Shown here: in pieces, positions 3,373-56,615 of the stretch
Layout: each line of letters opens with the position of its first letter
How positions within the stretch are numbered: position 1 is the stretch's first letter
Source of the DNA: Guillardia theta CCMP2712
Lineage: Eukaryota > Protista > Cryptophyta
Length of the DNA: 64,000 bases
Direction of reading: 5' to 3'
Assembly: GCF_000315625.1 (NCBI RefSeq)
Contig: NW_005434528.1
Coordinates: 98,230-162,229, forward strand
The notes under the pieces: model-generated
The model's input: the letters and a program-made list of their open reading frames with translations, nothing else
Told to the model about the DNA's origin: nothing
The model's database searches: none
Program-made: the position numbers and the translations under genes

Positions 3373-6300
3373 ATGGGGATGGTGGGGGCTACGAGCATGC
3401 AGACGAGGGTTGCGGCGGTGTGGGGGAGGAAGACACTTGTATGGCATCTTCTTGTGATGTGCTCACTTGTACCTCTCACCTGCTCTGAGAGTGCTCCCTC
3501 GGAATCTTCTTTCATTTCAAGTACTCCAGCAATCTCCTCGTCCTCCTCCTCTACTCCAGCCTTCTCCTCCTCCTCCTCCTCTACTCCAATCATCTCCTCG
3601 TCCTCCTCTACTCCAGCCTTCTCCTCCTCCTCTACTCCGGTCGTCTCCTCCTCCTCCTCTACTCCGGTCGTCTCCTCCTCCTCCTCCTCTACTCCGGTCG
3701 TCTCATCGTCTACGACGTCGACTACTCCAGCCATCTCTTCGACTCCAGAAAGTACTCCGGTCGTCTCCTCCTCCTCGTCTACTCCGGTCGTCTCCTCCTC
3801 CTCGTCTACTCCGGTCGTCTCATCGTCTTCGTCTACTCCGGTCGTCTCATCGTCTACTACGTCGACTACTCCGGTCGTCTCATCGTCTACGACGTCGACT
3901 TCTCCGGTCGTCTCATCGTCTACTACGTCGACTACTCCAGCCATCTCTTCGACTCCAGAAAGTACTCCGGTGATCTCCTCCTCCTCCTCTACTCCGGTCG
4001 TCTCCTCCTCCTCCTCCTCTACTCCGGTCGTCTCATCGTCTACTACCTCGACTACTCCAGCCATCTCTTCGACTCCAGAAAGTACTCCGGTGATCTCCTC
4101 CTCCTCGTCGTCTACTCCGGTCGTCTCCTCCTCCTCCTCGTCTACTCCGGTCGTCTCATCGTCTGCGACGTCGACTACTCCGGTCGTCTCATCGTCTACT
4201 ACGTCGACTACTCCAGCCATCTCTTCGACTCCAGAAAGTACTCCGGTTGTCTCCTCCTCCTCGTCTACTCCGGTCGTCTCCTCCTCCTCCTCGTCTACTC
4301 CGGTCGTCTCATCGTCTACTACCTCGACTACTCCGGTCGTCTCATCGTCTGCGACGTCGAGTACTCCGGTCGTCTCATCGTCTACGACGTCGACTACTCC
4401 AGCCATCTCTTCGACTCCAGAAAGTACTCCGGTGATCTCCTCCTCCTCGTCTACTCCGGTCGTCTCCTCCTCCTCCTCGTCTACTCCGGTCGTCTCATCG
4501 TCTACGACGTCGACTACTCCGGTCGTCTCATCGTCTACGACGTCGACTACTCCGGTCGTCTCATCGTCTACGACGTCGACTACTCCAGCCATCTCTTCGA
4601 CTCCAGAAAGTACTCCGGTTGTCTCCTCCTCCTCCTCTACTCCGGTCGTCTCCTCCTCCTCCTCGTCTACTCCGGTCATCTCATCGTCTACGACGTCGAC
4701 TACTCCAGCCATCTCTTCGACTCCAGAAAGTACTCCGGTCGTCTCCTCCTCGTCGTCTACTCCGGTCGTCTCCTCCTCCTCCTCGTCTACTCCGGTCGTC
4801 TCATCGTCTACGACGTCGACTACTCCAGCCATCTCTTCGACTCCAGAAAGTACTCCGGTGATCTCCTCCTCCTCCTCCTCTACTCTAGCAATCTCCTCCT
4901 CCTCGTCTACTCCGGTCGTCTCCTCCTGGACTACTCCGAGCGTCTCATCGACTCCAGAAAGTACTCCGGTTGTCTCCTCCTCTTCCTCTACTCCGGTCGT
5001 CTCCTCCTCCTCGTCTACTCCGGTCGTCTCCTCCTCCTCCTCGTCTACTCCGGTCATCTCCTCCTGGACTACTCCGGTCATCTCATCGTCTACTACCTCT
5101 ACTCCGGTCGTCTCATCATCTGCGACGTCGACTGCTCCGGTCGTCTCATCGTCTACTACGTCGACTACTCCGGTCGTCTCATCGTCTACTACGTCGACGA
5201 CTCCGGTCGTCTCATCGTCTACGACGTCGACTGCTCCGGTCGTCTCATCGTCTACTACGTCGACTACTCCGGTCGTCTCATCGTCTACGACGTCGACTAC
5301 TCCGGTCGTCTCATCGTCTACTACGTCGACTACTCCGGTCGTCTCATCGTCTACTACGTCGACTACTCCGGTCGTCTCATCGTCTACTACGTCGACTTCT
5401 CCGGTCGTCTCATCGTCTACGACGTCGACTGCTCCGGTCGTCTCATCGTCTACGACGTCGACTACTCCGGTCGTCTCATCGTCTACTACGTCGACTACTC
5501 CGGTCGTCTCATCGTCTACTACGTCGACTGCTCCGGTCGTCTCATCGTCTACTACGTCGACTACTCCGGTCGTCTCATCGTCTACTACGTCAACTACTCC
5601 GGTCATCTCATCGTCTACGACGTCAACTACGTCGACTACTCCGGTCGTCTCATCGTCTACTACGTCAACTACTCTGGTCGTCTCATCGTCTACGACGTCG
5701 ACTTCTCCGGTCGTCTCATCGTCTACTACCTCGACTACTCCGGTCGTCTCATCGTCTGCTACGTCGAGTACTCCGGTCGTCTCATCGTCTACTACCTCGA
5801 CTGCTCCGGTCGTCTCATCGTCTACGACGTCGACTGCTCCAGTCGTCTCATCGTCTACTACGTCGACTACTCCGGTCGTCTCATCGTCTACTACGTCGAC
5901 TACTCCGGTCGTCTCATCGTCTGCTACGTCGACTACTCCGGTCGTCTCATCGTCTACTACGTCGACTACTCCAGTCGTTTCATCGTCTACGACGTCGACT
6001 ACTCCGGTCGTCTCATCGTCTACGACGTCAACTGCTCCAGTCGTCTCATCGTCTACGACGTCGACTACTCCGGTCGTCTCATCGTCTACGACGTCGACTA
6101 CTCCGGTCGTCTCATCGTCTACGACGTCGACTACTCCGGTCGTCTCATCGTCTACCTTCAGGACACCATCCTTGAGTTCTCCCGTGCCGACTTTTCAGTT
6201 GTGTGGCAACGGAGTTCTTGACCCTGGTGAGACTTGTGATGATGGAAACACAATCTCTGGCGATGGTTGCAGCTCGCTGTGTCGAGTTGAGCCATACTGG

Positions 6301-8340
6301 ACCTGCAGCAATCCGGTGGAGACCACGGAGGAGATCTTCTCGTCGCCTGTGACCAGCACACCTGTGCAAACAACGCCTGTACTGCAGATGACCGAGCATC
6401 TGTCTCTGTGTACATGGCTTGCTACTCCCCAGTGGACCGGACTCTCCGTGCTGAGCGGATCACAGTACGCAACGATGCTGAACCAGCTGACCATCTTGTT
6501 GACTTCCAACTTTCCTCTCAAGGTTGGAAGCAATTTCTCCATCATTGGTCTCAATGTCACTATCGACGGCAACCCCGACAATGTCTCAGTCTCAGGCAAT
6601 GACATATTGTCTTATGCTCTCTGGTCGGATACAGCGGGCAAGCTTACCGTGTTTGTCAAGGCTGAGGTCAACTCCACTTCCTTCACTGTGCAGGTCGTCA
6701 ACCCATCATACGGCAGAGATCCGATCACGCTTGGCGCTGTGTGCTCGGACTGTGTGAGCTTTGCTCCTTCCTATCTGGTCTACAATGCAAACCTCACAAG
6801 CGGCCTCGCCACGGTCGCCCTCGCACCCAGCTCTTGCGGGAAGGACGGCCAAGGGATCGCACTGTACGGCAGCGACTGTCAATACAAATGCTATGGTGTG
6901 GTCACAGATAAATATTGTGTCTGCAATGCGGGGCAGTTCGGGCCAGGCTGCTCTCAGAGTCTGGGAACTCCTTCTCAGGTGCAAACAAAGTCCATTCCGC
7001 CAGGTGAGGCAGCATCTATCTCAGGATCGGGCGGGCTCTCGGTGAGTCTTCCAGCTGGGGCTCTGCTGGGGTCTCAGACCATTAGCGTGGCGGTCTACGA
7101 CGTGTCAAATCTTAACCTATCTCAAGGAACTACGGAGACGCTTGTACCAGCTGGGCCCGTGATCATCTTTACTCCAGCTGGTCTGCGGTTCAAGAAGCCG
7201 ATAACCATCCGCATCCCGTACAATCCTGACAAGATACCAGCAAATCTTCGACCCTACGTGTTCTACTACAACTCATCGTCATTGAATCCGTGGGAGCGAC
7301 AGATTTCTACCCCAAGACCGAACGCGACTCCTCCGGTCTTGGAGGCTTTGATCGATCATTTTTCGGGGTTTACTCCTCTTGGTGCAAATCCTCCCTCGAA
7401 TAGCGATTCATCTTCTCCGGCTTCTTCGTCGACTGGTTTGACCACAAGCTCGACGATTGGCTTATCCACTCCATCCCCTCTCTCGCCCTCGCCCTCGCCC
7501 TCTCCTACTCCACTTTCTCCTATTCCATCTCCTTCACCTACTCCTTCTTCTCCTTCATCTCCTTCTCCTCCCTCTCCGAATGTTCCTCCACCACCGCCTT
7601 CTCCATCAGGAGGTGGCAGCGGTGGTGGTGGAGGCAGTGGAGGAGGAGGTGGAGGCGGCGGCGGTGGTGGAGGTGGAGGTGGAGCTCCAAGTCCGCCTTC
7701 AGCCCCAGCTGCTCCACCTACTTACACAGCCTCAAGCTCGGCCTCCGGCTTTGCGGTTCGATTGCAGGTCGTCTCGCCCATGTCAGACACCTTCTTCAGC
7801 TCCAACTCCGACCAGATCAAGCAAGCGCTGGCGGAGGGACTCAGACTCAACGTCGCCGATGTCAACAGCCCGACGGTCATCGGATACGTGCAACGACGGT
7901 CCAACCAATCTCTCTCTTTCTCGGCAGACTTGAAGGTGGACAACCCCTTGGGCTTTGTCGAGTCAGTACAAGCCAACGCATCTCAGACGTTGACGAGATT
8001 GAACGTGGCTTTCTCGCAGAGGAGCATCCCCGACGCTACATCTTTCAGCATATCATTGATACCGCCGCCTGCTCTGTCCTCGGGCGCGATCGCAGGGATC
8101 GCCATCGGGTCAGTGGGAGCAGGGCTGGTGCTGGTGGCTATCGGCTGGATGGTCTACAAGGAGAGGAAGAGAAGGAATGTGGAGAAGCGATACGCTATCT
8201 CTGAGCCGCCTGCACAACAAGCAGCTCCGCTTCCTGTTCAAGAGTCTCCAGTAAGTGCAGATGGCTTCAGCGTAAGCAGTCAGTTCGTTGTAGAACCGAC
8301 CTTTCAAAATCAAGGTTTTCACTACTACAGATGGAGCTGA
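3373..8340 (+). CDS. Mucin-like type I membrane protein, copy 1 (1655 aa)
   Basis: Uninterrupted ORF. Features in order: signal-like N-terminus, ~880-aa Ser/Thr/Pro array, CGNGVLDPGETCDDGNTISGDGCSSLC (Myxococcus cysteine-rich/DUF4215-type repeat), EGF-like Cys cluster, ZU5-like region ending in IDHFSGF, Pro/Gly linker, TM helix GAIAGIAIGSVGAGLVLVAIGWMVY followed by KERKRR. Confidence 0.9.
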   Translation: MGMVGATSMQTRVAAVWGRKTLVWHLLVMCSLVPLTCSESAPSESSFISSTPAISSSSSSTPAFSSSSSSTPIISSSSSTPAFSSSSTPVVSSSSSTPVVSSSSSSTPVVSSSTTSTTPAISSTPESTPVVSSSSSTPVVSSSSSTPVVSSSSSTPVVSSSTTSTTPVVSSSTTSTSPVVSSSTTSTTPAISSTPESTPVISSSSSTPVVSSSSSSTPVVSSSTTSTTPAISSTPESTPVISSSSSSTPVVSSSSSSTPVVSSSATSTTPVVSSSTTSTTPAISSTPESTPVVSSSSSTPVVSSSSSSTPVVSSSTTSTTPVVSSSATSSTPVVSSSTTSTTPAISSTPESTPVISSSSSTPVVSSSSSSTPVVSSSTTSTTPVVSSSTTSTTPVVSSSTTSTTPAISSTPESTPVVSSSSSTPVVSSSSSSTPVISSSTTSTTPAISSTPESTPVVSSSSSTPVVSSSSSSTPVVSSSTTSTTPAISSTPESTPVISSSSSSTLAISSSSSTPVVSSWTTPSVSSTPESTPVVSSSSSTPVVSSSSSTPVVSSSSSSTPVISSWTTPVISSSTTSTPVVSSSATSTAPVVSSSTTSTTPVVSSSTTSTTPVVSSSTTSTAPVVSSSTTSTTPVVSSSTTSTTPVVSSSTTSTTPVVSSSTTSTTPVVSSSTTSTSPVVSSSTTSTAPVVSSSTTSTTPVVSSSTTSTTPVVSSSTTSTAPVVSSSTTSTTPVVSSSTTSTTPVISSSTTSTTSTTPVVSSSTTSTTLVVSSSTTSTSPVVSSSTTSTTPVVSSSATSSTPVVSSSTTSTAPVVSSSTTSTAPVVSSSTTSTTPVVSSSTTSTTPVVSSSATSTTPVVSSSTTSTTPVVSSSTTSTTPVVSSSTTSTAPVVSSSTTSTTPVVSSSTTSTTPVVSSSTTSTTPVVSSSTFRTPSLSSPVPTFQLCGNGVLDPGETCDDGNTISGDGCSSLCRVEPYWTCSNPVETTEEIFSSPVTSTPVQTTPVLQMTEHLSLCTWLATPQWTGLSVLSGSQYATMLNQLTILLTSNFPLKVGSNFSIIGLNVTIDGNPDNVSVSGNDILSYALWSDTAGKLTVFVKAEVNSTSFTVQVVNPSYGRDPITLGAVCSDCVSFAPSYLVYNANLTSGLATVALAPSSCGKDGQGIALYGSDCQYKCYGVVTDKYCVCNAGQFGPGCSQSLGTPSQVQTKSIPPGEAASISGSGGLSVSLPAGALLGSQTISVAVYDVSNLNLSQGTTETLVPAGPVIIFTPAGLRFKKPITIRIPYNPDKIPANLRPYVFYYNSSSLNPWERQISTPRPNATPPVLEALIDHFSGFTPLGANPPSNSDSSSPASSSTGLTTSSTIGLSTPSPLSPSPSPSPTPLSPIPSPSPTPSSPSSPSPPSPNVPPPPPSPSGGGSGGGGGSGGGGGGGGGGGGGGGAPSPPSAPAAPPTYTASSSASGFAVRLQVVSPMSDTFFSSNSDQIKQALAEGLRLNVADVNSPTVIGYVQRRSNQSLSFSADLKVDNPLGFVESVQANASQTLTRLNVAFSQRSIPDATSFSISLIPPPALSSGAIAGIAIGSVGAGLVLVAIGWMVYKERKRRNVEKRYAISEPPAQQAAPLPVQESPVSADGFSVSSQFVVEPTFQNQGFHYYRWS
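3520..6160 (+). repeat. Coding minisatellite of mucin copy 1
   Basis: 33-bp unit ACTACTCCGGTCGTCTCATCGTCTAC(G/T)ACGTCG (TTPVVSSSTTS), about 30 copies from ~5100 to 6155. It is preceded by composite higher-order units containing STTPAISSTPE. Confidence 0.95.
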
Positions 8341-8471
8341 GGCCCTGACATGTCTTGAATTTTGAAAAACACAACAAAATCTAATAATCTTCTGTAACTA
8401 CAATGATGAACTGTGATTTGAAAGCAAATAGATTTAACATGAAACTCGACACACACATTCGCTTTTGTTCA

Positions 8472-9659
8472 TCAGACGATTACGTGTCCAAAACCAGGTG
8501 GGCGTGCAACAAGAAGATTATCCTCGTAAAACTTCAGCCCTTGTACGATCATGTCCAGAGAAACAGATGAAGCTCCATGTATCTGCTGTAGACTTCCACT
8601 GGCCGGTCCCATCGGCGGTCGGTTTGACCCTGACACTGCATGGAGATAAAGGCGGATCCTTGCAGCTTGTGGCTTGTCCTGGAGGAGGATACCAAGCTCT
8701 TGATCGGAGTTGATCAGGATCTTGTCGCCATCGTCATCTATGTAGCTTAGCTGCAAGCAGCTCGTTGGGAGGCCCTTGAGATCTTCACTAAAAGCGCTTT
8801 GAAGTCCTTCCATCACCATCCTGTAACCACCTACAGGATTGCCAAGATGATCGAAGTCAAAGCTCCAATTGAGATGTCTGAAGACAGCTTCTTTCTCTCT
8901 TTGTACAAGAGATACCTTGAAGTTCATCTCACGATGTCTCAAGGAGCTGGAAGTCTGCGCCCCTGACTTTGGCATGAACGAGTGTTCAGATGATAACCGC
9001 GTAGGAAAAGTTTCGTTCGATTCGACGTGCGCGTTGCGACTCGTTCTGCGAGGCCTTGAGAGGCCATGACGCTTGATAAACCGAGAGTACCAGCCATGAG
9101 ACGCTTTGAAGTCTGACACCCCCATCTCGCTTGCCACGTTCATCGCACACTTGCAAATCTGTGACCTGCATCCCAACCCAAGACCGGCCTCTACTATGCA
9201 TTCATGGATTCGCTTCTCCAGTTCTAGATGTGAATCGTTGGGAGCATAGCGCTTGATGCTCGCATGAAGACCACAACCAGATATGTATTTCAGTCTGCAA
9301 ACATTCTCGGCCTTGAGAATTTTAGATATTGCGGATCTGCTCTTCCCAAACATCGTTGCGAGCTGGCCCTGGGTCATGAAGACTTCAGGGTTTGTTGAAG
9401 TATAGCACTTGATGATTTCCATCTTCTCTCCAAGAGTCAGGTTGCTCTTCTTGTTGTCAGCTTTCTTACATGAACCGCGGTCTGCCTTTGTCGTCTCCTT
9501 TGCTAGACTTGGCATGTTTCGAGCCCCTGACTCTGCAGATTCTTGTTGAAGAGGGGTTTGCTGAGCCATTGGAGGTGAGAAGAGACAAGGTTGCAGGTTC
9601 CCAAGGCCGCACAACTTGGCGAGAGTGTCGAAGTTCTTCACAGGCAGAAGTGTTTGCAT
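8472..9659 (-). CDS. CENP-B/pogo-type tandem HTH + PB1 domain protein, copy A (395 aa)
   Basis: LTLGEKMEIIK...TQGQLATMFGKSRSAISKILK (psq/CENP-B N-terminal HTH), LELEKRI...FKASHGWYSRFIKRHGL (HTH_Tnp_Tc5), and FKVSL...LSYIDDDGDKILINSDQEL (PB1 with OPCA motif). No DDE domain. Confidence 0.85.
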   Translation of the reverse strand: MQTLLPVKNFDTLAKLCGLGNLQPCLFSPPMAQQTPLQQESAESGARNMPSLAKETTKADRGSCKKADNKKSNLTLGEKMEIIKCYTSTNPEVFMTQGQLATMFGKSRSAISKILKAENVCRLKYISGCGLHASIKRYAPNDSHLELEKRIHECIVEAGLGLGCRSQICKCAMNVASEMGVSDFKASHGWYSRFIKRHGLSRPRRTSRNAHVESNETFPTRLSSEHSFMPKSGAQTSSSLRHREMNFKVSLVQREKEAVFRHLNWSFDFDHLGNPVGGYRMVMEGLQSAFSEDLKGLPTSCLQLSYIDDDGDKILINSDQELGILLQDKPQAARIRLYLHAVSGSNRPPMGPASGSLQQIHGASSVSLDMIVQGLKFYEDNLLVARPPGFGHVIV

Positions 9660-10460
9660 GGCTGATGAACAAGCAGCTGGTCCTACCCGCCCTCAGAGGA
9701 TAGGTCCACCAGACCACCCCACCCCCCTCGACCTCCTCGCTGCTTAAAACTAAACTCTCTGTAGTAAGAAACTCTTTCTTTTTCTTTTTTGGCAGAAGGT
9801 TCGCACTGCAGCATCGAAATGCCGCCGACAAATTTGAATATTTGTCTGCACCAAATTCTCAATGTGTCAAGATTTTTCGAAATATAAGCCATTTTTGCAG
9901 GTGTCAGATCGGATGTCCATGGGAATCTATAAAGCACTTTGGGAGGATATGAAGAAGGAAATATCCTACCGCTTTATACGGTCCCGCCTCAGGACGCATC
10001 AGATTGTTCTGAGGCGTGCCTACCGAGGCCTCCTACAGCTTATACCAACCAATTTTTTTCAATTTTTCCTACATCGCACACGACATGGGCAGGTGTCATG
10101 TTAATTACAATTGTAACCCGTTTAAGTCGAAAATATTTTGTAAATCCTTGCCGTTGAATACTTTGCCGTTGAAACTTTGCCGTTGCATTTGCGAACAGTT
10201 GCGTTTCAGTTTTCCGACGCCCTCTCCGACGCCCTTTCGGACTCCCCGAGTCCGACTCCTCGACTCGCCGCCGGTCAGCCTGCCCGGCCCGGCGCTCCGG
10301 TGTTGTAAGTATTTCAAGTTTGTAGTAAGTAGTAGTACTCCGTTTACTCAGAGTTAAGTTATCAAAAAATCAGTACGAGGACAATCAGGAGAGTTGAGGA
10401 GGCTTGACCTAAACCCAATCCTGCCAACTGCTGTTCCCCAAACTTAACTGATACCTTCAC

Positions 10461-10830
10461 TTAACAGCGCGCGGACCATTCGCCCGCGCCTTGAGACGCA
10501 TACCGGAATGCACCCGCGATGATGGCAGCGAAAGACAGGGAGGCCTTAAGCTGACGAAAGATCTTGGACCGGTTGCGTTTGTAAGTCGGATAACCTGAGA
10601 CGTCTGGCGAGGCCGAGAGGCCATCCAGCGCTGCCGTTTCCTTGTTCGCCGAGCGATCCGCCAGCCACCACAGAAAGCGCAACGCATCGTCCTGCAAGAG
10701 TCCATCAGTGCTGGCGATGATGGGAAGAAAGGCCTTTGGCGGGACGTGCTGGGCATATGCATTACGATGCTCTACTGACTGGCATGCCGGGCTCGTCGTC
10801 CCACTTTCCTCACGACATTGCCTCCTCCGC
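10461..10830 (-). mobile_element. 3' fragment of a CRE-like (restriction-like endonuclease) non-LTR retrotransposon
   Basis: Minus strand reads HRNAYAQHVPPKAFLPIIASTDGLLQDDALRFLWWLA, resembling the C-terminal endonuclease region of early-branching non-LTR elements. Confidence 0.5.
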
Positions 10831-11599
10831 TGGGTCTGGAGGAGGTTCGGGGAACCAAAGACCTCGGAAGCAGGCCGGATTTCATCGACCTACCTCCCAG
10901 AGGACACCCATCCATCAGCCTACAGTCAATCCCACATCCCCACCGCCCCCTCCTCATTCGGCAAATCTTTCGGCTTACTTTCACAATCTGCGTCCACAAG
11001 ACATGCCTTGTGGTATGTCGAATTGGCACAGAGCCCTCCCTATCTTTGCTCAACAGGGACCACATAAGCTTCCGGCGTGCGCTACAGTTTACGCTAGACC
11101 CGCTACAAGGTTACCCGGACTTGCATTGCGAGGAAGCTAAGATTATCCGGAGCTTGAACTTCGGACAAGCTTTTGCCAGAACTTCCATTCTTTCCTCGAA
11201 CAGTCTACGCCCTAAGGGAAAATGGAAATGGTGACTTCAGTTGCCTTCTTAGGATTGCCAGCTGAGAACGTCATTGTTGCACAGTCATAGTTGATCATGA
11301 TAACAGAGCGATGCTTCCCGTGAAGTTTGAAGATATCAATCCACTCAGGCTCGACAAGTTGAACAAGGCCGAGACAATGTGTCCCGCAACGCATGTTGCT
11401 ACCGTTTGCACGACAGAATCCTGGAGACAACAAAACTGTGGAACTGTCTGGGAAGTCAACAGGATCCTGGGTCCGCATTTCAGGCAATCTACGAGAGGTG
11501 AAGGAATTTATGTGCTGAAAGCTGAGATTGACCAGTCTGGGCAATCGCTTGTCATCGCAGCACAGTCAAGCAGCAGTCATTATACCGAGACGGCGATGC

Positions 11600-12110
11600 A
11601 GATATTCATCCACCATCTGAACGATAAAGCGATGTCGTATTGCAATATGCTTGAGGTTAGAAAATGCTCGACGGTCCTTGAACCGCTGCGTTGTCGACGA
11701 GAATGATGGTTGCATCGCGCTGTACAAACCCCAGCTCGAGCAGAAGAGATCGTAGCGTCCGTCAGTTGGAGCAACTGTACAACTCGGCTTCCGTACTCGA
11801 TAAGCTGACGACTTTCTGTAATTTGCTGGAGAAGTTAACTGGACTGCCGTTGAAAGAGATCACGATTCCCCCTTGAGAACGACGAGTGATTGAATCTGTT
11901 CCCCAGGTGGAATCGCTGCTATCAGAGTGTTGTGATAATATTGCTGGTTGAAGAACGTGCCCGATTGGGAGAACGTCAAGCCTTGTTCACGAGTATTGTA
12001 AACGAATTGAGTCAAGTGAATGACTGCCTTGACGTCGCTAACCCGAGGCTGTTTGGCAAACCGACTCAGCAGGCTGACCGCGAAACATATACGTGGTCTT
12101 GTTGCGGCGC
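11600..12110 (-). mobile_element. Ty1/copia RT C-terminus and RNase H relic
   Basis: TRPRICFAVSLLSRF, SQGGIVISFNGSPVNFSSKLQKVVSLSSTEAELY and KHIAIRHRFI match copia RT/RNase H motifs. Frameshifted. Confidence 0.8.
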
Positions 12111-12699
12111 GGTGCCAGGAGGGGCGGTGTATGATCTCGTTCAGGCTCTGCCTCATCTCCCTCTTCTAGAAGATCACGTTCTCCCGCAACGCAGTGGCGA
12201 TTCCCTTGACGACGAAGTGGCAGGGGTGGCAGGGGGACGGCGCCAGGAAGAGGACGAGCAGCACCAGCGCCACGCTCGCCGACCTCAGGCTCCCGCTGTC
12301 CCCTTCTCTGCCCGGTCGTGCCCGTCCCGCATAGCGTCGTATTCGCGCCGCGCGGGCAGCTCAGTGTGGTGGAGGTGAGGCTCGCGCGCTCAGTGCCCTC
12401 CCTGCCCTTCAACCCGACCAAACGCGCTGGTGACGGTGGAGGATGCGCGCTGGGACTGTGCGGGTCGGTGCTTCCTTGGATCTGGCATCCGATACGACGC
12501 GGTTGTCCGCGAGGTCATGTTTTCGGAAGCGGCTGAGGTCGGGGATCGGGAAGCCTAGCGCCTGCAGCAGCGACCGGGACTCGCAGGTCTTCTGGGCGAG
12601 TGGTCTAAGGGCCTTACGACGACCTGGGCCAGAGCTAGCCTTCTTCCACCTGCCGGAGAGCAGCTTCGAGATCCACAACATGAAAGGCAAGTTCCGCGC

Positions 12700-13260
12700 C
12701 TAGTCGAACTCTTGTCCCTGATAAAGTTGCCATGGAGAGAGGCCGTCCCGATTCGTCAGGTTTGGTAAACTCAGTTGAAAATCAGCGTTGCTTGTTGGAC
12801 CGAGAAATGCCAGAAACGCTGCGGAACTTGCGCCTGGTACGAGATTGCTCGATGGATCGTGGTTACTGTTCTGATCGCCCTCTCTGCTCGCCCGTTGGCA
12901 GCACTTGTGTAGTCCGGCGTAAAATTCCAGATAATATTTGCAAACTCCGATCCATTGTCGCTGACTACTGTCATGACCTTGGGTAGATCAAACTCTGCAT
13001 GACTTCCTTGGTTTCGCCTTTAGATGTCAGAGGAATAGTTATGATAAATCCACTGTACGACCAAGACGCGGCTACTTCTAAGATATCGATATCCGCCTTG
13101 GGCTTTGAGAAGTAGCTTCGCAAATTTGCTTGCACGACAGACATGACAAGGGCTCGCTGTAAGATGACACGGTTGAACTAAATGTGACCTTATTGTTACC
13201 AACATTCTTTGGATCCTGTTCGATGGATGTCCGAGCCTGAGATGCCAGACCACAGAAGGC
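12700..13260 (-). mobile_element. Ty1/copia GAG-pre-integrase and integrase relic
   Basis: WHLRLGHPS...PCHVC, VVSDNGSEF, TPDYTSAANGRAERAIRT and VPQRFW...ATLIFN. Confidence 0.8.
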
Positions 13261-13969
13261 ACTGGGCAGTATGGAATAGATAACATGTCCTCGCTGCTCA
13301 ATGATTTCAGTGTACAACGCCGCAGACATCTTAACGAAGATCTGCCCGGTCTCCAAAATTCGACAGCTCGCTCAGTTCTTGTTTGGCAACGACATGTCTC
13401 GGATCGACAGTTGAGCGACGCTGCTGCGAAGTCATGGAAAGTCATCTGAGCAACACTGATGACATTCGGAAGGGTTCACTGAATGTACAACTTAATCAGG
13501 GAAATTTTATATCCACATCGTATATCTGAATACTGAACTTCATGACAGGCTGAACCTCTGATAACATCTGATGAATGACATCAGCATCGAGCCTCGCATC
13601 ATCCCTATGTCAAGTGACATGGACGAGTCACAGGGATCCCCCAAGCAGAGCCAGGAGTCGCACATGATGACGACGGGGCCACAAGACAGCTCTCCCACCA
13701 TGATAAGTGCGGCAAAGAAGCTGTGGGGTGACAAGAGGAAAAAGTCGATGATGGAGGGATCAGTCCTGTTCAAAGCTCTGAATGTCAAAATTGACAAGAG
13801 CTGTTTTCAGGAGAGGAACTACCTCAGAATTCCGCTGGTCGAGCGCCGCGATGTTGATACAAGCCGCACGGCAGATGCAAGGGAGGTTGTGAAGACCGAG
13901 GAAGGAAGACGTCCCTGAACCTCAGAGTACAAGCCATGGCATATTACGATGGCAACCTGATGACATGAA

Positions 13970-14175
13970 TCGCGTGCAGACGTCGGCTGTGTATTCACTG
14001 TTGTACGAGCCGGATGGGCACTCCACGCATACCGCGGGCGCGGCGGTGTAGTACCCTGGCACGCAGAGACAGTCGCTCTGGTTGGTCGAGCCCGGGGCGC
14101 TCCAGGAGTTGGCCGGGCACCTCGTGCACTGCGCGTCCCCCGTGCTCGCGCGCGGTAGCGCCCCGGGCCGCACAT
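13970..14175 (-). pseudogene. Isolated Cys-rich repeat (GCC2/GCC3, ephrin-receptor-like) gene fragment
   Basis: CGPGRY / STGDAQCTRCPANSWSAPGSTNQSDCLCVPGYYTAAPAVCVECPSGSY. One frameshift; a GC-rich patch among TE debris. Confidence 0.65.
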
Positions 14176-14820
14176 GCAGTTGAGGATAGTGGTGCTCCCC
14201 TCTGGGCCCTTGTTTCCTTCGTTGGGGAAGCGAGTGCAGGGCTCGATACCGGCCGATGCAGAGATGAAGAAGCAGCCGATGAAGTCATACCTTCGATCGA
14301 AGTTATGAAATGATGCTGCCAGGAGTGAAGGAGGTTCCAGATGGGAAGAAGTCAGGAGGCTGATTGCATACTATGATGGAAGGAGGAATATCCAGCATGA
14401 GCAAGAATAATGCAGCTTCGGGCAAGACGACCAGAGACCCAGCATGACTTCACCTTGATGCCAAGCAGCAAGCTTCCGAGGCTACTCTATGCAAGGGAGA
14501 GAAGACTGGGGGACGACGCGCGAAGAGCCAACGGTGGCAAGTCAGTTGAAAGGTCTAGTCAAATTTGACAAGGACTTCGACGGGTTGGAGGTGCAAAGAG
14601 GCAACTGATCAGAGCAAGCCTCAGCTCAGGTCATGTCAATTAGTCGATGTGGCTCTGTGCACAAGCTCACGGAAAGGACAGCAACAGGTACAATAGGGAC
14701 GACGTAGCAGGATCACGAAGAAGACAGCAAGAACCTAGGACCCATGGATGGCAGCAGGTGATAAGCGAGTCAGCTCATATCAGTCTGCGACAGGACAGCA
14801 AGTGACAGGAATTATGGCTA

Positions 14821-14960
14821 GTGGGAAGTTGGAAGTATCACCCCTGCCAGTCATGGACATTGAAGGACAAGGGGTTCGATCAGAGAAGACTGAAGGCACG
14901 AGACCACCTCTCAGTAGGTTGCAGGGACACACAGCTTCTGTCAAGGCCAAGGGAGCAACT
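14821..14960 (+). mobile_element. Possible copia RT N-terminal relic in the opposite orientation
   Basis: SWTLKDKGFDQRRLKAR resembles the copia W-x-x-K-x-K...KARLV motif. Confidence 0.3.
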
Positions 14961-15110
14961 GTGTCAACTCGACAGGAAGCGTTGGATGAGAATCGAAGAC
15001 CTCGTCATGTCAAGCCTATGACTCTCTCTCAGGAAGCCTTCAGGGTATGGGGCTAGGACTCGGACCGGTCGAAGGATCATACCGCGGATACGAAGCGTAG
15101 AGTACCGGTA

Positions 15111-18100
15111 GTGGTAGTTCCTAGGACAAAGGAGAATGAGGTGAAGGGTCTCTGTGAGACTGGATTGCTTGAAGTAAATAAGCTTGAACATCTGTACCAA
15201 TCTCCCATCACCTCTGTTACTTCTCTGAATCCTGATATTATTCCTGCGCGGCCATCGGTGATCGCAAGTATCACCACTATAGATAGTGCCACGTCAAAGT
15301 TCGAGATCACTTGCGCGGGAAGCGGATACTACTTCAACGGAGTTTTCTTGTTGTCTGGAAACGCAGGGGTAAGACGCATTGAGGTGACGGTACAGGGAAA
15401 CAACTGCCCCTTAGGAACTACTGTCAATATCGAGTCTCCGAACCCAGCTGGAGCCTACATTGATGGTTTGACAGGGTCGACCTATGCGGGCCAGCAAGCC
15501 TCTGCGATTGTCTACCTGAATGGAAACAGTGTGTCTCAAGTGGTACTCCAGAACGGAGGTAGTGGATACATATCAACTCCTTTGGTTACTTTTCCGGCTA
15601 CGTGCAATGCTCAGGCGAGGGCGCACATCTCCCAGAACTTCTCGTCGAGCATTGCGATGAGATACGAAACAGGCAACACCTTCTTGTACGACTGGAGCAG
15701 AGACCAGACCGACACCTTGACGGGCCTTTACTCGTCTGAGTTCTCGTCTGTCTGCTTGTTCTCTCTCGAGACGGCGGCGAGCGGGTCAGCAGAGATAAAC
15801 TCTGGGTATGTGGCATCGATTGCCATTACCCACGCTGGTACAGCCTGCATGACCCCTACAATTACTGTGTCCGCACTGTCTGGGGTGTCAGTAGCTGCAC
15901 AAGCGAAGGTCAACGTGACGTACGGCGGGTATGGATACACGTCAGCACCATCACAGGTTGCGGAGGCGCGACTGCGCAGGCCTTCTTGAGCTACTCCAAC
16001 GTCGATGTGCTTGTCGGAGGATCAGCCTCGTTCTCCAGGTAGACTCTCGCAGAGAGGACGAGGTACTACTTCGCTACCTCGCTGCCGGTCAAGAGCTCGT
16101 ATGTGAAGGGATATGGAGTGTCGGGGATGGTAATCATCGGCGGTACGCTCGCGGGAGACTGCTACAGCTTTCCTTACGTGGTATCAGCTCTGCAAACTTC
16201 ATGGAAAAGCTACAACTGTATCCCATCAGTTCAGCGCTGTGCCCGACGTCGAGTTGCTATCCCATACCTTTACAGAGCATTGTTATAAACTATGAGCACG
16301 TATTGCAATTCAGTCTTTCATCAAGCCTCCTGACTGGGATGAGTCATGTTGAGTTTTCAATATACGACTCCAACGGCCTGTGGCTGCAGAAAGTAACCGC
16401 GGAAGTGCCTCATGACTCTCTTTCCATGAAGTTGTTGAGCGCTGAGTTCTGTCAGGTTTGCAATGCTAATTCAGTCTGTGCCAGTAACGGCGTTTGTGAC
16501 GATGGAGCTGTCAGTCTGCAGTTCTCCGAGTATCAGGGGATGAGGACGTTGGTTGCTCCAGCCATCGCAACGAGCACCGTCACGTTCACTGTAATGTACC
16601 ACGAGGCGATGCAAAGCAATTACGAGCTGTCGTTCGATGTCAAAGTTGGGCAGTTCTACCTGAATGTTATCTTCTGGAAACAGATCAGTGTGAGCGAATG
16701 GAAATTAGCAGCAAGAATACCCCAGTCATTGATTCCAGGGTTTCACCCCTGTGCCATTCACTTCCTTTGGGTTGATCCTGTTTACGCAAGAAGTGACGTG
16801 TATCAGTGTTTGCAATGGAGAGAGCCAGGTCACATTTAGCGTCCAGAACCTTCCGAGTGCAAGTTCATTGTCATACAACTATGAGCTTGACCGGGTTCGC
16901 AAGCAAGAAAGTCTTCATTTACACGTATAGTCGAGGTCCAAGATCTCCAAGGCGATCTGTTCGTCTACAGGATCGAGCATGCAGCTAACTTTCGATCAAG
17001 ATGCCACTGAATACGTTCCCTCGACTTGGTTTTCTTGCAGCAAATCTCTATCGTTCACTCCTGCTGCTGCCTCTACCTGTCTTCTCACTGGCAATCAGAG
17101 CGTGTTTGTTAACTTCAGTAATGCGCAGCCCTCGCTCCCCGGAGATGGTGTCCAGGTGCTGTCGTCTGCATCCTTGACAGCACCCAACGTCGTCAGCAAG
17201 GTAGAGTTCTCCTCAAGGCCAATAGGTGGGAACTACCTGCCTGTCATCCTCGGTCCCTCAACGAATGATTTCTGCACATCGCTCCGCCTGCTAGCGTCTG
17301 TTGAAAGTAGGAGGATCTCGAGATTCTTCTGGTCCTGCTCCAACAACCAGCAGCTGGACCAGCTCCTGCGCCAGAATCAGACGGACACGATAGACTTGAG
17401 CTTGGACGAGTTGACATTCATAGGGTATCAGCGCCAATACAACATCTCAGTTCAGGTAGTCGATGTCTTTGGTGTTGCAAGTGAAGTCGCACAACATGTT
17501 GTCTGGCAAACTCTCTCCTCTTCGATCTCTGCGGTGATTTCGGGACAAGCTGTCTACATGATGCATGAGGAAATACATCTGCGCGCAAAACTGTCTCCTT
17601 CCTCATGCTTGCAGCAATTTGACGATGTGATCAACACAACTCCAGCTGACATCTTTAATGTCACCAACCGTGTCGACTTGCAAATTCCTGCGTTTGCATT
17701 GCAAGTTGGATCTTACCAGGTGGAAATGACTGCATTCTTGTCCAACCGTCCATACTTGACGGGAGCTTCATCCTTCAGATTCGAAGTCAGGCAGAGCAAT
17801 GCCTACATGTATGTGTTGGGAGGCTCTCCAGTTGAGGCCTCTGTAGATCAATGGTTCAGATTGAACATGATGCAGATTAATCCTCAGCAAGCTCCTAGCA
17901 CGGCGACAACTTTCTCGTGGGTCTGAGTACAGCATGTTGCTGGCAATGCCCTTCCCTGCATCGACCAGAACACGTCGGCGTGATGTTTTCAAGCTCACAG
18001 ACTTTGTATCTGGGCATCAACAACATTCTGCTTGATCATGAGAAGATACAGGAAGGGATGATCATAGTCAACGCTATCGACAGGCTATCCTTCCAGGCGC

Positions 18101-18640
18101 TGCTGTCAAACTCGACAGGCGTCAGTTATGAATGGAGCATACCGATGAGCCAGTACACCCTCAGCAACCTTCCAGTAGGATCAAGTTCAAACCTCTTTGC
18201 GTTTATCCCCTCGGGAGGCATGTCTTTGAGAGAAGTGGCAGTCTACTCCATATATCATTGACAGCTGTTCGCGGTGCAGTCCGTGGATCTGCGCAGATGG
18301 AGACTACATTGATGGACGTTGACGTGCCGCCGTTGCCCGGTTCCTGCTCGTACTGCCTCAACACCACCTCCTCCAACATCAACCCGCTAGTGGACGTGCT
18401 TACTGTTTCTTGCGGCAACTGGACTGATGAAGACCCTCCCTTGCGTTACAACTGATTTTTGGCACGAGCCGACATTGATTTCATACATGACCTATGTGCT
18501 TGCCTCTGGATCGCAAACCATCCTGACCTTTCAGCCCAATTCGGCTCTAAGTCACTTCCAGCTATTGTACACAAATGTACTTCTGGTTTCACAGACCGAT
18601 CTTTGCACAGGAGACAGTAACTTGAAGCATCCAGGCTGAT
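15111..18640 (+). pseudogene. Fragmented surface-protein pseudogene: paralogue of part of the 4127-aa protein followed by a REJ/PKD-like region
   Basis: GVFLLSGNAGVRRIEV, AHISQNFSS and RDQTDTLTGLYS align with GVFMLEGQRSGIERIEI, AHLSHNFTS and RDHFDSLTGLHS of the giant ORF. Downstream frames give RFFWSC, LQIPAFAL, SYEWS and PPLPGSC...VSCGNWTDEDPPLRY (REJ-like). At least six broken frames. Confidence 0.7.
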
Positions 18641-19118
18641 CAGCAAGGCATGGCCTCGCCGCTTGAAGTGACGTGGAGCCAGCATTCGTTTCCTGTGCCA
18701 CAAGTCTCGTATTCTTCAACACACAGAAGTTGGATACAGGGCTTCTGCTGAGTCACCCTGTGTTGAGTCCCACCCCCTTGTTTCTTTACTCAAAGTTTTA
18801 AGTTAACCTTGCTGGTACGGGACGTTCCACCCCCCGCAGCAGGCTTCTCATGTAGGAGTCGCTCCCTACACGGGTGGGGTGGGGGTGGTCCAGTGCCGCC
18901 TCCTGCCGCCTATGCGCTTTAAGTGAACGACATATGTAAGGTTGCTGGAAGGTATTGCCATCGCTGCTCCTCGATCCTCCTGCCTTCCTGAAGACTATCA
19001 GATGAACCCTGCCTCTTTACCAGCTCGATTCAAACCTCCTCATGTCTTCCTGCCTTGTCTTCCTCTCCCTTCTCTTAAAGTGCTCTGTGCATGTTTCTGT
19101 ACTGATTCTTCATCAGCC

Positions 19119-20273
19119 ATGCGGGCTCTTTTATCCAAGGAGAATCGCGATAATTCATCAAAGTCAAGTGGACCTTCAAATCTTCGACCTTGTCTCTTCT
19201 CCAATCAGATTGTTCAGAAAATTCCTCCCCAACAAGAAGCTACAGAGTCCGGTGCAAGAAGCACAACGTCAAGGTTAAGCGATAATGCGATGGCAGAATG
19301 CGCTGACATGAAGCGCAACCTGACTCTTGGAGAGAAGATGGAAATCATCAAGTGCTATACTTCAACAAACCCTGAAGTTACTATGACCCATAGCCAGCTC
19401 GCAAAGATGTTTGGGATGAGCAGATCTGCTATTTCTAAAATTCTCAAGGCCGAGAACGTTTGCAGATTGAGACACATTACGAATTGTGGTCTTCATGCGA
19501 GCATCAAGCGCTATGCTCCCAACGATTCACATCTAGAACTGGAGAAGCGAATCCATGAATGCATCGTAGGGGCTGGGCTTGGATTTGGCGGCAGGTTGGA
19601 GATTCGCCAATACGCTATGGAAGTAGCAAGAGAGATGGGGTTGTCAGACTTCAAAGCGTCTCATGGCTGGTGCTCTCGGTTTATCAAGCGTCATGGTCTT
19701 ACAAAGACGAAAATCTTGGGTCGAGACGTGTATGTGGAAACAAACAAAACTTCGCTTACGACTGTATCATCTGCATCATCGCTGACGCAGAAGTCAGAGG
19801 CGCAGACTTCCAGCTCCTTGAGACATCGTGAGATGAACTTCAAGGTATCTCTTGTAAGGGGAGGGCAAGAAGATGTCTTCAGACAGCTGAAGTGGAGCTT
19901 TGACTTCGATCATCTTGACAATCCTGTAGGTGGTTACAGGATGGTGATGGAAGGACTTCAAAGTGCTTTCAGTGAAGATCTCAAGGGCATTCGAACGAGC
20001 TGCTTGCAGCTAAGCTACATAGATGACGATGGCGACAAGATCCTGATCAACTCCGATCAAGAGCTTGGTATCCTCCTCCAGGACAAGCCACAAGCTGCAA
20101 GGATCCGCCTTTATCTCCATGCAGTGTCAGGGTCAAACCGACCGCCGATGGGACCGGCCAGTGGAAGTCTACAGCAGATTAATGGAATTCAACCTCTTCC
20201 TCTGGACATGCTTGTACAGGCCTTGAAGTCTTACGAGAACAATCTTCTTATTTCAACCCTACCTGTTGTATGA
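19119..20273 (+). CDS. CENP-B/pogo-type tandem HTH + PB1 domain protein, copy B (384 aa)
   Basis: Same motifs as copy A. Start placed at ATG 19119 because both copies share the context TTCATCAGCCATGC. Confidence 0.85.
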   Translation: MRALLSKENRDNSSKSSGPSNLRPCLFSNQIVQKIPPQQEATESGARSTTSRLSDNAMAECADMKRNLTLGEKMEIIKCYTSTNPEVTMTHSQLAKMFGMSRSAISKILKAENVCRLRHITNCGLHASIKRYAPNDSHLELEKRIHECIVGAGLGFGGRLEIRQYAMEVAREMGLSDFKASHGWCSRFIKRHGLTKTKILGRDVYVETNKTSLTTVSSASSLTQKSEAQTSSSLRHREMNFKVSLVRGGQEDVFRQLKWSFDFDHLDNPVGGYRMVMEGLQSAFSEDLKGIRTSCLQLSYIDDDGDKILINSDQELGILLQDKPQAARIRLYLHAVSGSNRPPMGPASGSLQQINGIQPLPLDMLVQALKSYENNLLISTLPVV

Positions 20274-20962
20274 AACATGTTGGTCTGAAGAAAGAGTCAA
20301 ATTGCGCAAACAAGGCTCCTCGCTCAATTTTGCATTGGGGAATACTAGTAAATAAAACATGGTAACCATTCGAACTCCTCAATCGCTCTTGATTGCAAAA
20401 TTGTTGTAAATGTTCACATAATGTTATTACTTCATTTGGTTGCTGTCAAAGCAACATCTAAGACATACTTCAAGTTTTGTGCATAGTGAAGAGAGTATAC
20501 TTGACCTCTGACTTGCCACTTGTATTCGACCCAACGACCTATGACAATACATCCTGTCCTGATGCTGAGATCTTGTCGGGGGGGTCGTCATTTGTAAAAC
20601 TCCATTCAAACCATGTTTCAACAACGGAAGGTCGATCTCCCCTTACGGTAGGTACAGGTTGTTTCCACATGTGTGCTGATCAATGGTGACCAAAAGATTT
20701 CCTTGCATGTCTGCATCGGATGCATCGGATTGCTGCTGATCCAAAAAGCTTGATTGTACACAGTGAGTTATAACAACCATCATCCAAGATTGCGCTTCCA
20801 TCATCAATCACAAACCAGGAAGCATGGAGAATTTCAAAATTGTGTACAAGTGACATCAATAGTTGGCAGCAGGATTCTGAAAGTAATTGAATTAAGAGCA
20901 ATTGTGCTGCAAACAATCAAGAGATGATCGAATTCTTGAAGCAGAGGAAAAAAGAAGGAAAA

Positions 20963-21113
20963 ACTTGAAACGAAGGAAGATTCCCAGGGAGCACTCTCAG
21001 AGCAGGTGAGAGGTACAAGTGAACACATCACAAGAGGATGAAATAAGAGAGTCTTCCTCCCCCACATCGCCGCAACCCTCGTCTGCATGCTCGTAGCCCC
21101 TACCATCATCCCC
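20963..21113 (-). pseudogene. 5' remnant (signal-peptide region) of a third mucin-like gene
   Basis: MVGATSMQTRVAAMWGRKTLLFHPLVMCSLVPLTCSESAPWESSFVSS is nearly identical to the N-terminus of copy 2; homology stops where the repeat array would start. Confidence 0.85.
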
Positions 21114-56409: not shown

Positions 56410-56615
56410 CTCGTCCTCGTCCTTGTCCTTGTCCTCGTCCCTTGCCTGCCCTTCCCTGCCCTGCCCTGCCCTGTCCTGCCCTGCCCTTCCCCTTTCTCCC
56501 TTTGCTTCCCTTCACTTCTCTCCCCTCACCTTCCATATTGATCGACTTGCTGTCGTCCTCGAAGATGAAGGGACCGTCGGAGGGAGGGCGGCGAGGGCTC
56601 GACGGTTTGACTAAA

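What the first reader, a model, noticed from the sequence alone, without database searches (positions are those of the whole stretch)
3373..21113. Co-duplicated cassette: mucin-like receptor facing an HTH-PB1 regulator
Seen: mucin copy 1 (+) ends 131 bp from the convergent HTH-PB1 copy A (-). About 10 kb on, HTH-PB1 copy B (+) again faces a mucin 5' remnant (-), the same tail-to-tail pair inverted. Inference: the two genes were duplicated as a unit and may be a receptor/regulator or surface-antigen expression module. I recall no description of such a pair. Simple segmental duplication is the null explanation, and mucin copy 2 has no such neighbour.
Basis: partly seen in the sequence, partly recalled or inferred. 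Interest (0 to 1): 0.75.

Follow-up and report, generated by a model that had tools for sequence, protein, structure and literature searches.

The report
Duplicated mucin / HTH-PB1 gene pair
In the alga Guillardia theta, a surface mucin-like gene and a neighbouring DNA-binding (HTH-PB1) gene were copied together several times on one chromosome piece. The copies then lost one partner or the other, which fits ordinary block duplication better than a working receptor/regulator unit.

Summary
The window is nuclear DNA of the cryptophyte Guillardia theta (contig C146).

**The four units.** The tail-to-tail pair occurs four times within about 65 kb.
- U1: mucin1 (3373-8340, +) and HTH-PB1 A (8472-9659, -), 131 bp apart.
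- U0: a 96-98 % identical full copy 26.55 kb upstream of U1, outside the window.
- UB: intact HTH-PB1 B (19119-20273, +) facing the mucin remnant. The remnant is more than a 145-bp 5' piece. It is a decayed, internally deleted mucin pseudogene (about 20480-21107, -).
- U2: mucin2 (39413-42922, -), said to have no neighbour, is followed tail-to-tail by the last ~70 coding bases of an HTH-PB1 gene plus spacer (39033-39130, +).

So "duplicated as a unit" is supported.

**Why a functional module is not supported.**
- The two genes lie 131 bp apart, so any block copy takes both.
- After copying, UB lost the mucin and U2 has no usable HTH gene.
- The diverged paralogues (HTH-PB1 on C2; mucins on C90 and C100) have no partner within 10 kb.
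- The region holds Copia retrotransposons and other duplicated surface-protein genes.

Best reading: passive segmental duplication with reciprocal decay and gene conversion. Expression and DNA binding could not be tested. Interest is low to moderate.

The parts
1328..9793 (.). Block U1: the segment that is duplicated 26.55 kb upstream as U0. It holds the mucin1 upstream region, mucin1, the 131-bp spacer, HTH-PB1 A and 134 bp of its 5' flank.
   Evidence: blastn of the contig against itself gives 95-98 % identity. Homology stops at 9793.
3373..8340 (+). mucin1, a 1655-aa type I membrane protein. Order of parts: signal peptide, about 870 aa of Ser/Thr-rich 11-residue repeats, DUF4215 Cys motif, beta-sandwich, EGF-like Cys block, ZU5-like domain with an HFS motif, Pro/Ser and poly-Gly linker, juxtamembrane domain, TM helix, about 60-aa tail.
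   Evidence: ORF and translation. Pfam: DUF4215 26.1 bits (just under the cut-off of 27) and ZU5 22.5 bits (cut-off 21). Repeats. Paralogue alignment and AF2 model, pLDDT 81.
8341..8471 (.). 131-bp spacer between the two convergent stop codons.
   Evidence: Identical (131/131) in U0. Partly kept and expanded to 305 bp in U2.
8472..9659 (-). HTH-PB1 A, 395 aa: CENP-B_N-like HTH, HTH_Tnp_Tc5 and a C-terminal PB1. No DDE transposase domain.
   Evidence: Pfam. 97 % identical to GUITHDRAFT_119416, which is copy A' of U0. PB1 beta1 Lys and acidic OPCA-type motif are invariant in the family alignment.
19119..20273 (+). HTH-PB1 B, 384 aa from ATG 19119. Intact. 72 % aa identity to A.
   Evidence: ORF. 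Pfam: HTH_Tnp_Tc5 39.7, CENP-B_N 25.0, PB1 28.1 bits. Ks 0.36 and Ka/Ks 0.47 against A, with Ka/Ks 0.24-0.32 in the domains.
20480..21107 (-). Mucin pseudogene facing HTH-B tail-to-tail. The signal-peptide piece (20963-21107) is 92-94 % identical to the live copies. The DUF4215 trace (about 20652-20806) and the beta-domain trace (about 20480-20595) are 68-77 % nt and 43-53 % aa identical, with frame shifts and a stop. The repeat array and the 3' 1.65 kb are missing.
   Evidence: blastx and blastn hits are collinear. 0 of 200 shuffles reach the scores. It matches only the mucin1/2 lineage, not the C90 or C100 paralogues.
39033..39130 (+). Truncated HTH-PB1 3' tail (equivalent to residues 372-394 of A, stop codon lost) plus 23 bp of spacer. 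It faces the 3' end of mucin2 across a 305-bp spacer.
   Evidence: blastn 8449-8519 <-> 39130-39060, 80 %, E 1e-14. blastx 70 % aa, 35 bits, against a maximum of 23 bits in shuffles. Alignment A3. No further HTH traces in 37327-39032.
39413..42922 (-). mucin2, 1169 aa, intact. It has a shorter and different repeat array. Its identity to mucin1 is mosaic.
   Evidence: Translation. Ks 0.045 over the C-terminal 650 codons, ranging from 0 to 0.19 along the gene. 5' part 81-96 %.
11605..15293 (.). Old fragments of a Ty1/Copia retrotransposon between the two inverted units. A young full copy of the same family lies between U0 and U1, upstream of the window.
   Evidence: 79-92 % matches to window coordinates -14600..-2100. 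gag_pre-integrase hit at 13020-13445. RVT_2, rve and identical LTRs in the upstream copy.
24943..37326 (-). Context only: a 4127-aa surface-protein gene lying between UB and U2. A diverged N-terminal fragment of the same family lies about 4 kb upstream of mucin1, in the same relative order and orientation.
   Evidence: ORF. tblastn 51 % over residues 32-251 at window -1364..-684 (+).

Best explanation
A chromosomal block holds two unrelated, convergently transcribed genes. One encodes a mucin-like type I surface glycoprotein. The other encodes a pogo/CENP-B-type HTH protein with a C-terminal PB1 domain. This block was copied at least three times within about 65 kb of one Guillardia theta contig by ordinary segmental duplication.

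**The three events.**
- An old inverted copy gave UB (Ks about 0.3-0.4).
- A copy that took the mucin, the spacer and only the last ~70 coding bases of the HTH gene gave U2.
- A very recent direct copy gave U0 and U1 (Ks 0-0.03).

**Why the two genes travel together.** Their stop codons are 131 bp apart, not because they work together. Afterwards the redundant copies decayed reciprocally: the mucin died in UB, and U2 has no usable HTH gene. Gene conversion patched parts of the surviving copies, repeat arrays expanded and shrank, and Copia elements inserted.

**Shown:** the four units, their boundaries, their divergences, and the lack of linkage among diverged paralogues.
**Inferred:** the order of events, gene conversion, and the absence of functional coupling.
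For: - **Four units, same tail-to-tail geometry:**
- **U0/U1 block:** bounded at 1328 and 9793. Spacer identical at 131/131 and HTH 5' flank at 134/134. No homology beyond 9793.
- **UB:** the decayed mucin traces are 68-77 % identical at nucleotide level, of the same order as HTH A-B Ks 0.36.
- **U2:** identity falls from 97 % in the mucin body to 90 % at the stop and 80 % in the HTH tail. Ks varies from 0 to 0.19 along the gene, which fits gene conversion over an older copy.
- **Reciprocal loss:** HTH-B is intact with Ka/Ks 0.24-0.32 in its domains, while its mucin is a pseudogene. mucin2 is intact while its HTH is a 23-codon stub.
- **Unlinked paralogues:** the HTH-PB1 on C2:452584-453792 (57 %; the copy whose orthologue is seen in Hanusia phi) has no mucin within 10 kb. 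The mucins on C90 and C100 (60-64 %) have no HTH traces.
- **Duplication-prone setting:** a young Copia element with identical LTRs lies between U0 and U1, and old fragments lie between U1 and UB. Giant surface-protein paralogues occur in the same order on both arms.
Against: - The adjacency has survived, at least as remnants, through every duplication seen. A cis-acting link cannot be excluded from sequence alone.
- The 145-bp signal-peptide piece of the pseudogene is far better kept (92-94 %) than the rest (about 70 %). This needs a special explanation, either a conversion tract or retained use.
- No flank homology could be found around UB beyond the two genes, so the extent of the oldest event is not defined.
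- Only one genome could be examined for synteny.
- No expression data were available.
Confidence: 0.75

Rival explanations
1. The pair is a cis-linked functional module. The HTH-PB1 protein would regulate the adjacent mucin, or the convergent transcripts, whose stops are only 131 bp apart, would overlap and interfere with each other. Selection would then keep the genes together and favour duplication of the whole unit.
For: - The same tail-to-tail geometry appears in all four units.
- The spacer is very short, so overlapping 3' ends are plausible (inference).
- HTH-PB1 has the makings of a transcription factor: two HTH domains and an oligomerising PB1.
- HTH A and A' differ by 10 nonsynonymous and 0 synonymous or flank changes. 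This could reflect adaptive divergence.
Against: - UB keeps an intact HTH gene beside a dead mucin, and mucin2 is intact beside a 23-codon HTH stub.
- The diverged paralogues of both families are unlinked.
- The mucin tail has no recognisable domain for a PB1 partner.
- Adjacency of 131 bp makes co-duplication automatic.
Confidence: 0.12
2. The recent U0/U1 duplication, or the whole repeated layout, is an assembly artefact such as collapsed or misjoined haplotypes or repeats.
For: There is a 100-N gap inside the mucin0 repeat array. The window ends at the contig end. U0 and U1 are 96-98 % identical.
Against: - The copies differ by substitutions and indels and have different flanks.
- A complete Copia element and other unique sequence lie between them.
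- UB and U2 are far too diverged (12-30 %) to be assembly duplicates.
Confidence: 0.05
3. The HTH-PB1 gene is carried by a mobile (pogo-like) element that inserted independently next to mucin genes. The adjacency would then reflect target preference rather than co-duplication.
For: The DNA-binding domains are of transposase type. A/B homology is confined to the coding sequence plus about 20 bp on each side. About 60 HTH-only relatives are scattered in the genome, several in tandem clusters.
Against: - No DDE domain and no terminal inverted repeats around either copy.
- Spacer and mucin sequence are co-duplicated with the HTH sequence in U0, U1 and U2.
- The decayed mucin beside HTH-B is about as diverged from the live mucins as HTH-B is from A.
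Confidence: 0.03

Closest known systems
Segmental (block) duplication followed by reciprocal gene loss and gene conversion among paralogues (general knowledge)
   Same: Neighbouring genes are copied together in direct and inverted orientation in a transposon-rich region. In each copy a different partner degenerates. Identity is mosaic along surviving paralogues.
   Different: Nothing in kind. This is an undescribed instance in a cryptophyte, with the unusual detail that all four units survive within 65 kb.
Plant transcription factors that join a DNA-binding domain to a C-terminal PB1 (NIN-like proteins with RWP-RK + PB1; ARF with B3 + PB1). From my own knowledge, not tested here.
   Same: A DNA-binding domain is followed by a PB1 that has both the basic Lys and the acidic OPCA-type motif. 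Homo- or hetero-oligomerisation among paralogues is therefore plausible.
   Different: The DNA-binding part here is of the pogo/CENP-B transposase type (PF03221, PF04218), not RWP-RK or B3. No function is known.
MUSTANG-B (MUG7/MUG8) domesticated Mutator transposases of plants that carry a PB1 domain (review PMC8616336)
   Same: A transposase-derived protein is joined to a PB1 domain.
   Different: A different transposon superfamily (Mutator against pogo/Tc1-mariner). PB1 is N-terminal in MUGB and C-terminal here. The proteins here have lost the catalytic domain altogether.
Membrane mucins and ZU5-domain proteins with HFS autoproteolysis (PIDD, UNC5-like). From my own knowledge.
   Same: Signal peptide, long Ser/Thr-rich tandem repeats, a juxtamembrane globular region, one TM helix and a short tail. 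A ZU5 Pfam hit ends in a conserved HFSGF motif.
   Different: The ZU5 score is marginal (22.5 against 21). Foldseek returned only generic beta-sandwich and weak GAIN-domain matches. In animal proteins ZU5 is cytoplasmic, whereas here it would be extracellular. Cleavage is untested. Relatives were found only within G. theta.

Membership tests
Co-duplicated gene pair (segmental duplication) | Both genes, in the same relative orientation, are present in each copy. | tested here: met
   - U0 and U1: both genes intact.
- UB: HTH intact, mucin present as collinear decayed traces.
- U2: mucin intact, HTH present only as a 3' tail.
Co-duplicated gene pair (segmental duplication) | Homology continues through the intergenic spacer. 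| tested here: inconclusive
   - U0/U1: met, 131/131.
- U1/U2: partly met. 8341-8371 and 8449-8471 are kept, with insertions between.
- U1/UB: not detectable. The 3' end of the mucin and the spacer are deleted or replaced there.
Functional regulator/target or receptor/regulator gene module | Linkage is conserved among diverged paralogues or orthologues. | tested here: not met
   - C2 HTH-PB1 (57 %): only low-complexity hits within 10 kb; its neighbours are unrelated.
- C90 and C100 mucins: no HTH traces above shuffle level.
- Other species could not be tested.
Functional regulator/target or receptor/regulator gene module | Both partners are retained under selection after duplication. | tested here: not met
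   The mucin is a pseudogene in UB and the HTH is a 23-codon stub in U2, while the respective partners are intact.
Functional regulator/target or receptor/regulator gene module | Co-expression, or binding of the regulator at the target. | not testable with these tools
PB1 domain (PF00564) | Profile score above the gathering threshold; beta1 Lys and acidic OPCA-type motif. | tested here: met
   A scores 28.4 and B 28.1 bits against a cut-off of 23.6. K248, D308, G311 and D312 are invariant across six family members.
pogo/Tc5 transposase (active element) | DDE catalytic domain and terminal inverted repeats. | tested here: not met
   Only the DNA-binding domains are found. PF03221 is above its cut-off in both copies; PF04218 is above it in B and just below in A. 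No flanking inverted repeats.
ZU5 domain (PF00791), in the mucin | Profile score above threshold; ZU5 fold; HFS motif. | tested here: inconclusive
   Scores of 22.5 and 21.8 bits against a cut-off of 21. HFSGF is conserved in the closer paralogues. Foldseek on the three-domain model did not return ZU5 structures. The domain was not folded alone.

The most novel reading that the evidence does not exclude
The convergent mucin / HTH-PB1 pair is kept together as a cis-regulatory unit. For example, overlapping 3' ends might couple expression of a surface coat protein to that of a PB1-oligomerising DNA-binding protein. The cluster of intact and decayed copies in both orientations would then serve as a gene-conversion reservoir for varying the surface mucins. 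The well-kept signal-peptide patch in the pseudogene and the mosaic identity of mucin1 and mucin2 would be traces of such exchange.
Probability: 0.08. Interest if true: 0.6.

Novelty: new member of a known kind. Interest (0 to 1): 0.25.

Why it matters
If the reading is right, this locus needs no new biology. It is a clear small example of block duplication, reciprocal gene decay, gene conversion and retrotransposon insertion in a cryptophyte nuclear genome. It also warns that co-duplication of close neighbours is not evidence of a functional module.

The two gene families are of more interest than their adjacency.
- The HTH-PB1 family is a transposase-derived DNA-binding domain joined to PB1. 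In the searches run here it was found in cryptophytes and in unattributed transcript and metagenome sequences.
- The mucin family combines Ser/Thr repeats with a possible self-cleaving ZU5-like domain on the outside of the cell.

Those were raised as separate findings.

Tried and rejected
- **Remnant as a lone 145-bp fragment or spliced exon.** Rejected: collinear decayed traces of two further mucin domains follow it. No convincing splice donor is seen at its end.
- **mucin2 without a neighbour.** Rejected.
- **Decayed mucin derived from a distant paralogue (C90 or C100).** Rejected: it matches only the mucin1/2 lineage.
- **Transposon carriage of the HTH gene.** No terminal inverted repeats and no DDE domain.
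- **Hidden partners beside the diverged paralogues.** Sensitive blastx with shuffle controls gave only low-complexity (poly-Glu/Leu, Gly-rich) hits near C2, and nothing near C90 or C100.
- **A larger ancestral unit, giant gene > mucin > < HTH.** The order, orientation and spacing agree on both arms. No nucleotide homology was found in the intervening flanks, so this stays open.
- **Rooting the order of events from the short tails.** Not possible: there are three lineages, no outgroup, and fewer than 150 bp.
- **Literature.** No paper joins Guillardia theta with PB1. The seven papers that hold both 'Guillardia theta' and 'segmental duplication' looked unrelated by title and abstract.
- **Fold search of the mucin's globular part.** Gave only generic beta-sandwich and weak GAIN-like matches.
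Full report
**Source.** The window is contig C146, bases 98230-162229, of an 87-Mb assembly in 669 contigs. The HTH-PB1 protein at 8472-9659 is 97 % identical to GUITHDRAFT_119416 of Guillardia theta CCMP2712, which lies on a contig of the same length, 162,229 bp. That protein is the upstream copy A' described below. The DNA is therefore nuclear DNA of this cryptophyte alga. It is not human, and nothing here concerns a pathogen.

**Checking the observation.** The stated features are all present.
- mucin1 is an open frame at 3373-8340 (+), 1655 aa. HTH-PB1 A is at 8472-9659 (-), 395 aa. They are 131 bp apart.
- Copy B is open from 18942 to 20273 (+). Alignment with A and relatives places its start at ATG 19119, giving 384 aa.
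- Both proteins pass Pfam's cut-offs for HTH_Tnp_Tc5 and PB1. B also passes for CENP-B_N, and A falls just short.
- A and B form an inverted repeat of 87-88 % identity, 8468-9454 <-> 20292-19306. Weaker homology reaches 17 bp beyond the start codons.
- At 20963-21107 (-) lies a 145-bp copy of the first 145 bp of the mucin reading frame, 92 % identical to mucin1 and 94 % to mucin2.

**The remnant is a whole decayed gene.** The 690 bp between HTH-B's stop and the 145-bp piece carry two further traces, on the same strand and in the same order as in the mucin. One is the DDGN..GDGC..C DUF4215 motif with the following ~30 residues (window about 20652-20806, 47-53 % aa identity). The other is part of the beta-domain (about 20480-20595, 43 % aa). 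They lie in different frames and include a stop codon. At nucleotide level the three collinear inverted matches to mucin1 are 68-77 % identical, with E from 8e-17 to 2e-4. None of 200 shuffles of the 690 bp reached the first, the second or the summed score. The traces match only the mucin1/2 lineage, not the paralogues on C90 or C100. The repeat array (2.7 kb in mucin1) and the last 1.65 kb plus spacer are missing. HTH-B therefore faces a dead, internally deleted mucin gene at about 20480-21107 (-).

**mucin2 has a neighbour after all.** mucin2 runs from 42922 to 39413 (-) and encodes 1169 aa, intact. Beyond its stop codon, at 39060-39130, lies sequence 80 % identical to 8449-8519, with E 1e-14. 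That stretch of U1 is the last 48 coding bases of HTH-PB1 A plus 23 bp of spacer. Read on the + strand, 39033-39101 encodes a 23-residue peptide 70 % identical to residues 372-394 of A, scoring 35 bits against at most 23 bits in shuffles. The stop codon is lost, and the spacer has grown from 131 to 305 bp by insertions. No other HTH trace is found between 37327 and 39032. Either the copying event broke inside the HTH gene's last 70 bases, or the rest was deleted later.

**A fourth unit lies outside the window.** Whole-genome searches placed a second full-length HTH-PB1 (97 % aa identity) and a second mucin (98 %) exactly 26,550 bp upstream of A and mucin1.
- Earlier first-stage notes gave the lead for this.
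- The shared block corresponds to window 1328-9793.
- Within it, the 131-bp spacer and the 134 bp upstream of the HTH start are identical. Homology ends abruptly at 9793.
- Between U0 and U1 lies a complete Ty1/Copia retrotransposon with identical ~0.85-kb LTRs and RVT_2, rve and gag-pre-integrase domains, plus extra LTR copies.
- Older fragments of the same family lie between U1 and UB, at 11.6-15.3 kb.

**Ages of the copies.**
- HTH A against B: Ks 0.36 and Ka/Ks 0.47. The N-terminal 66 codons are saturated. The PB1 part has Ks of only 0.08, which suggests a conversion tract.
- The decayed mucin in UB is 68-77 % identical to the live copies, which is the same order of divergence.
- mucin1 against mucin2: Ks 0.045 over the C-terminal 650 codons, but ranging from 0 to 0.19 along the gene. 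Identity falls to 90 % at the stop codon and 80 % in the HTH tail, and the 5' part is 81-96 %. This mosaic fits gene conversion laid over an older copy.
- U0 against U1: Ks 0.024 in the mucin and 0 in the HTH gene.

There were therefore at least three events. Two took both genes whole, and one took the mucin with a stub of the HTH gene. Their exact order cannot be rooted from the short tails.

**Is the linkage more than descent?** Outside this contig it is absent.
- The only other full-length HTH-PB1 gene is at C2:452584-453792 (57 %). It is the copy whose orthologue is seen in the Hanusia phi transcriptome.
- Within 10 kb on either side of it there is no mucin-family match. Sensitive searches gave only low-complexity hits to poly-Glu/Leu and Gly-rich stretches. 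The downstream frames are unrelated and include what looks by eye like a BRCT motif.
- The nearest mucin paralogues, on C90 (60 %) and C100 (64 %), have no HTH match within 10 kb, and none above shuffle level in their 3' flanks.
- Inside the cluster, the partners have been lost reciprocally while the other gene stayed intact.
- The mucin's ~60-residue cytoplasmic tail has no recognisable domain, so no PB1 partner is evident.
- There are no terminal inverted repeats or DDE domain to suggest that the HTH gene moves by itself.

**The proteins.** HTH-PB1 has two pogo/CENP-B-type helix-turn-helix domains and a C-terminal PB1. The PB1 beta1 lysine and acidic DxDGD motif are invariant in the family, so head-to-tail oligomerisation among paralogues is plausible. 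A precedent for a transposase-derived protein with PB1 is plant MUSTANG-B (PMC8616336).

The mucin has, in order: a signal peptide, 11-residue Ser/Thr repeats, a DUF4215 motif, a beta-sandwich, an EGF-like cysteine block, a marginal ZU5 hit ending in a conserved HFSGF motif, Pro/Ser and poly-Gly linkers, a juxtamembrane domain and one TM helix. A model of the globular part reached pLDDT 81. Foldseek gave only generic beta-sandwich and weak GAIN-domain matches.

**Verdict.** The simplest account is passive segmental duplication of close neighbours in a duplication-prone, transposon-rich cluster of surface-protein genes, followed by reciprocal decay and gene conversion (confidence about 0.75). 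A cis-functional module is not excluded (about 0.1), but it fails the two tests that could be run. Expression and DNA binding remain untested.

**Limits.**
- Only one genome could be examined for synteny.
- Two genome-search runs failed on a low-complexity query.
- No relevant literature was found on this pair.

Noticed in passing
window 8472-9659 against its upstream copy at window -18078..-16891 (L005): HTH-PB1 A and A' differ at 10 sites, all nonsynonymous. There are no differences at about 266 synonymous sites or in 265 bp of flanking non-coding DNA. The chance that all 10 fall on nonsynonymous sites is about 0.01 if the flanks are counted and 0.08 for coding sites alone. Most changes lie in the N-terminal and C-terminal linker regions, and one (N174K) lies in the second HTH. 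This may reflect diversifying selection after a very recent copy or conversion.
   Followed up: partly
window 19900-20100 (PB1 part of HTH-B) against 8650-8850: The PB1-coding part of A and B has Ks 0.08, against 0.28-0.41 in the rest of the gene. This is a likely gene-conversion tract between inverted copies 10 kb apart.
   Followed up: partly
window -14635..-5700 (L005/L006), upstream of the window: A complete Ty1/Copia retrotransposon with identical ~0.85-kb LTRs and open gag/integrase/RVT_2 frames lies between U0 and U1, so the insertion is young. Extra inverted LTR copies lie at -5176..-2086.
   Followed up: partly
window -1364..-684 (+), L006; and window 15297-15953 (+): Two diverged fragments of the family of the 4127-aa surface protein (24943-37326, -).
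- An N-terminal piece (51 % identity to residues 32-251) lies about 4 kb upstream of mucin1. This is the same order and orientation as giant > decayed mucin on the other arm, so the oldest duplicated block may have been about 20 kb and included that gene.
- A mid-protein piece (34 % identity to residues 1986-2221) lies in a string of broken frames at 15.1-18.5 kb.
   Followed up: partly
window 7300-7360 and paralogues on C90 and C100: A conserved HFSGF motif sits at the end of the ZU5-like hit of the mucins. It is the same tripeptide at which PIDD and UNC5-type ZU5 domains cleave themselves (from my own knowledge), but here it would be on the extracellular side.
   Followed up: partly
whole genome G000: About 60 further matches to the CENP-B/Tc5 HTH part alone, many in tandem or inverted clusters (C23:592-602 kb, C30:397-407 kb, C312, C82:213-217 kb, C2:1041-1047 kb). 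This is either an expanded domesticated family or a pogo-like element family. Not examined.
   Followed up: no
window 56613-56901 and 61691-61980; window -50320..-49111 and 59549-60758: Further dispersed repeats within the contig: 90-96 % direct copies 5 kb apart, and a 1.2-kb inverted match of 98 % between the far upstream region and the window's end. Not examined.
   Followed up: no
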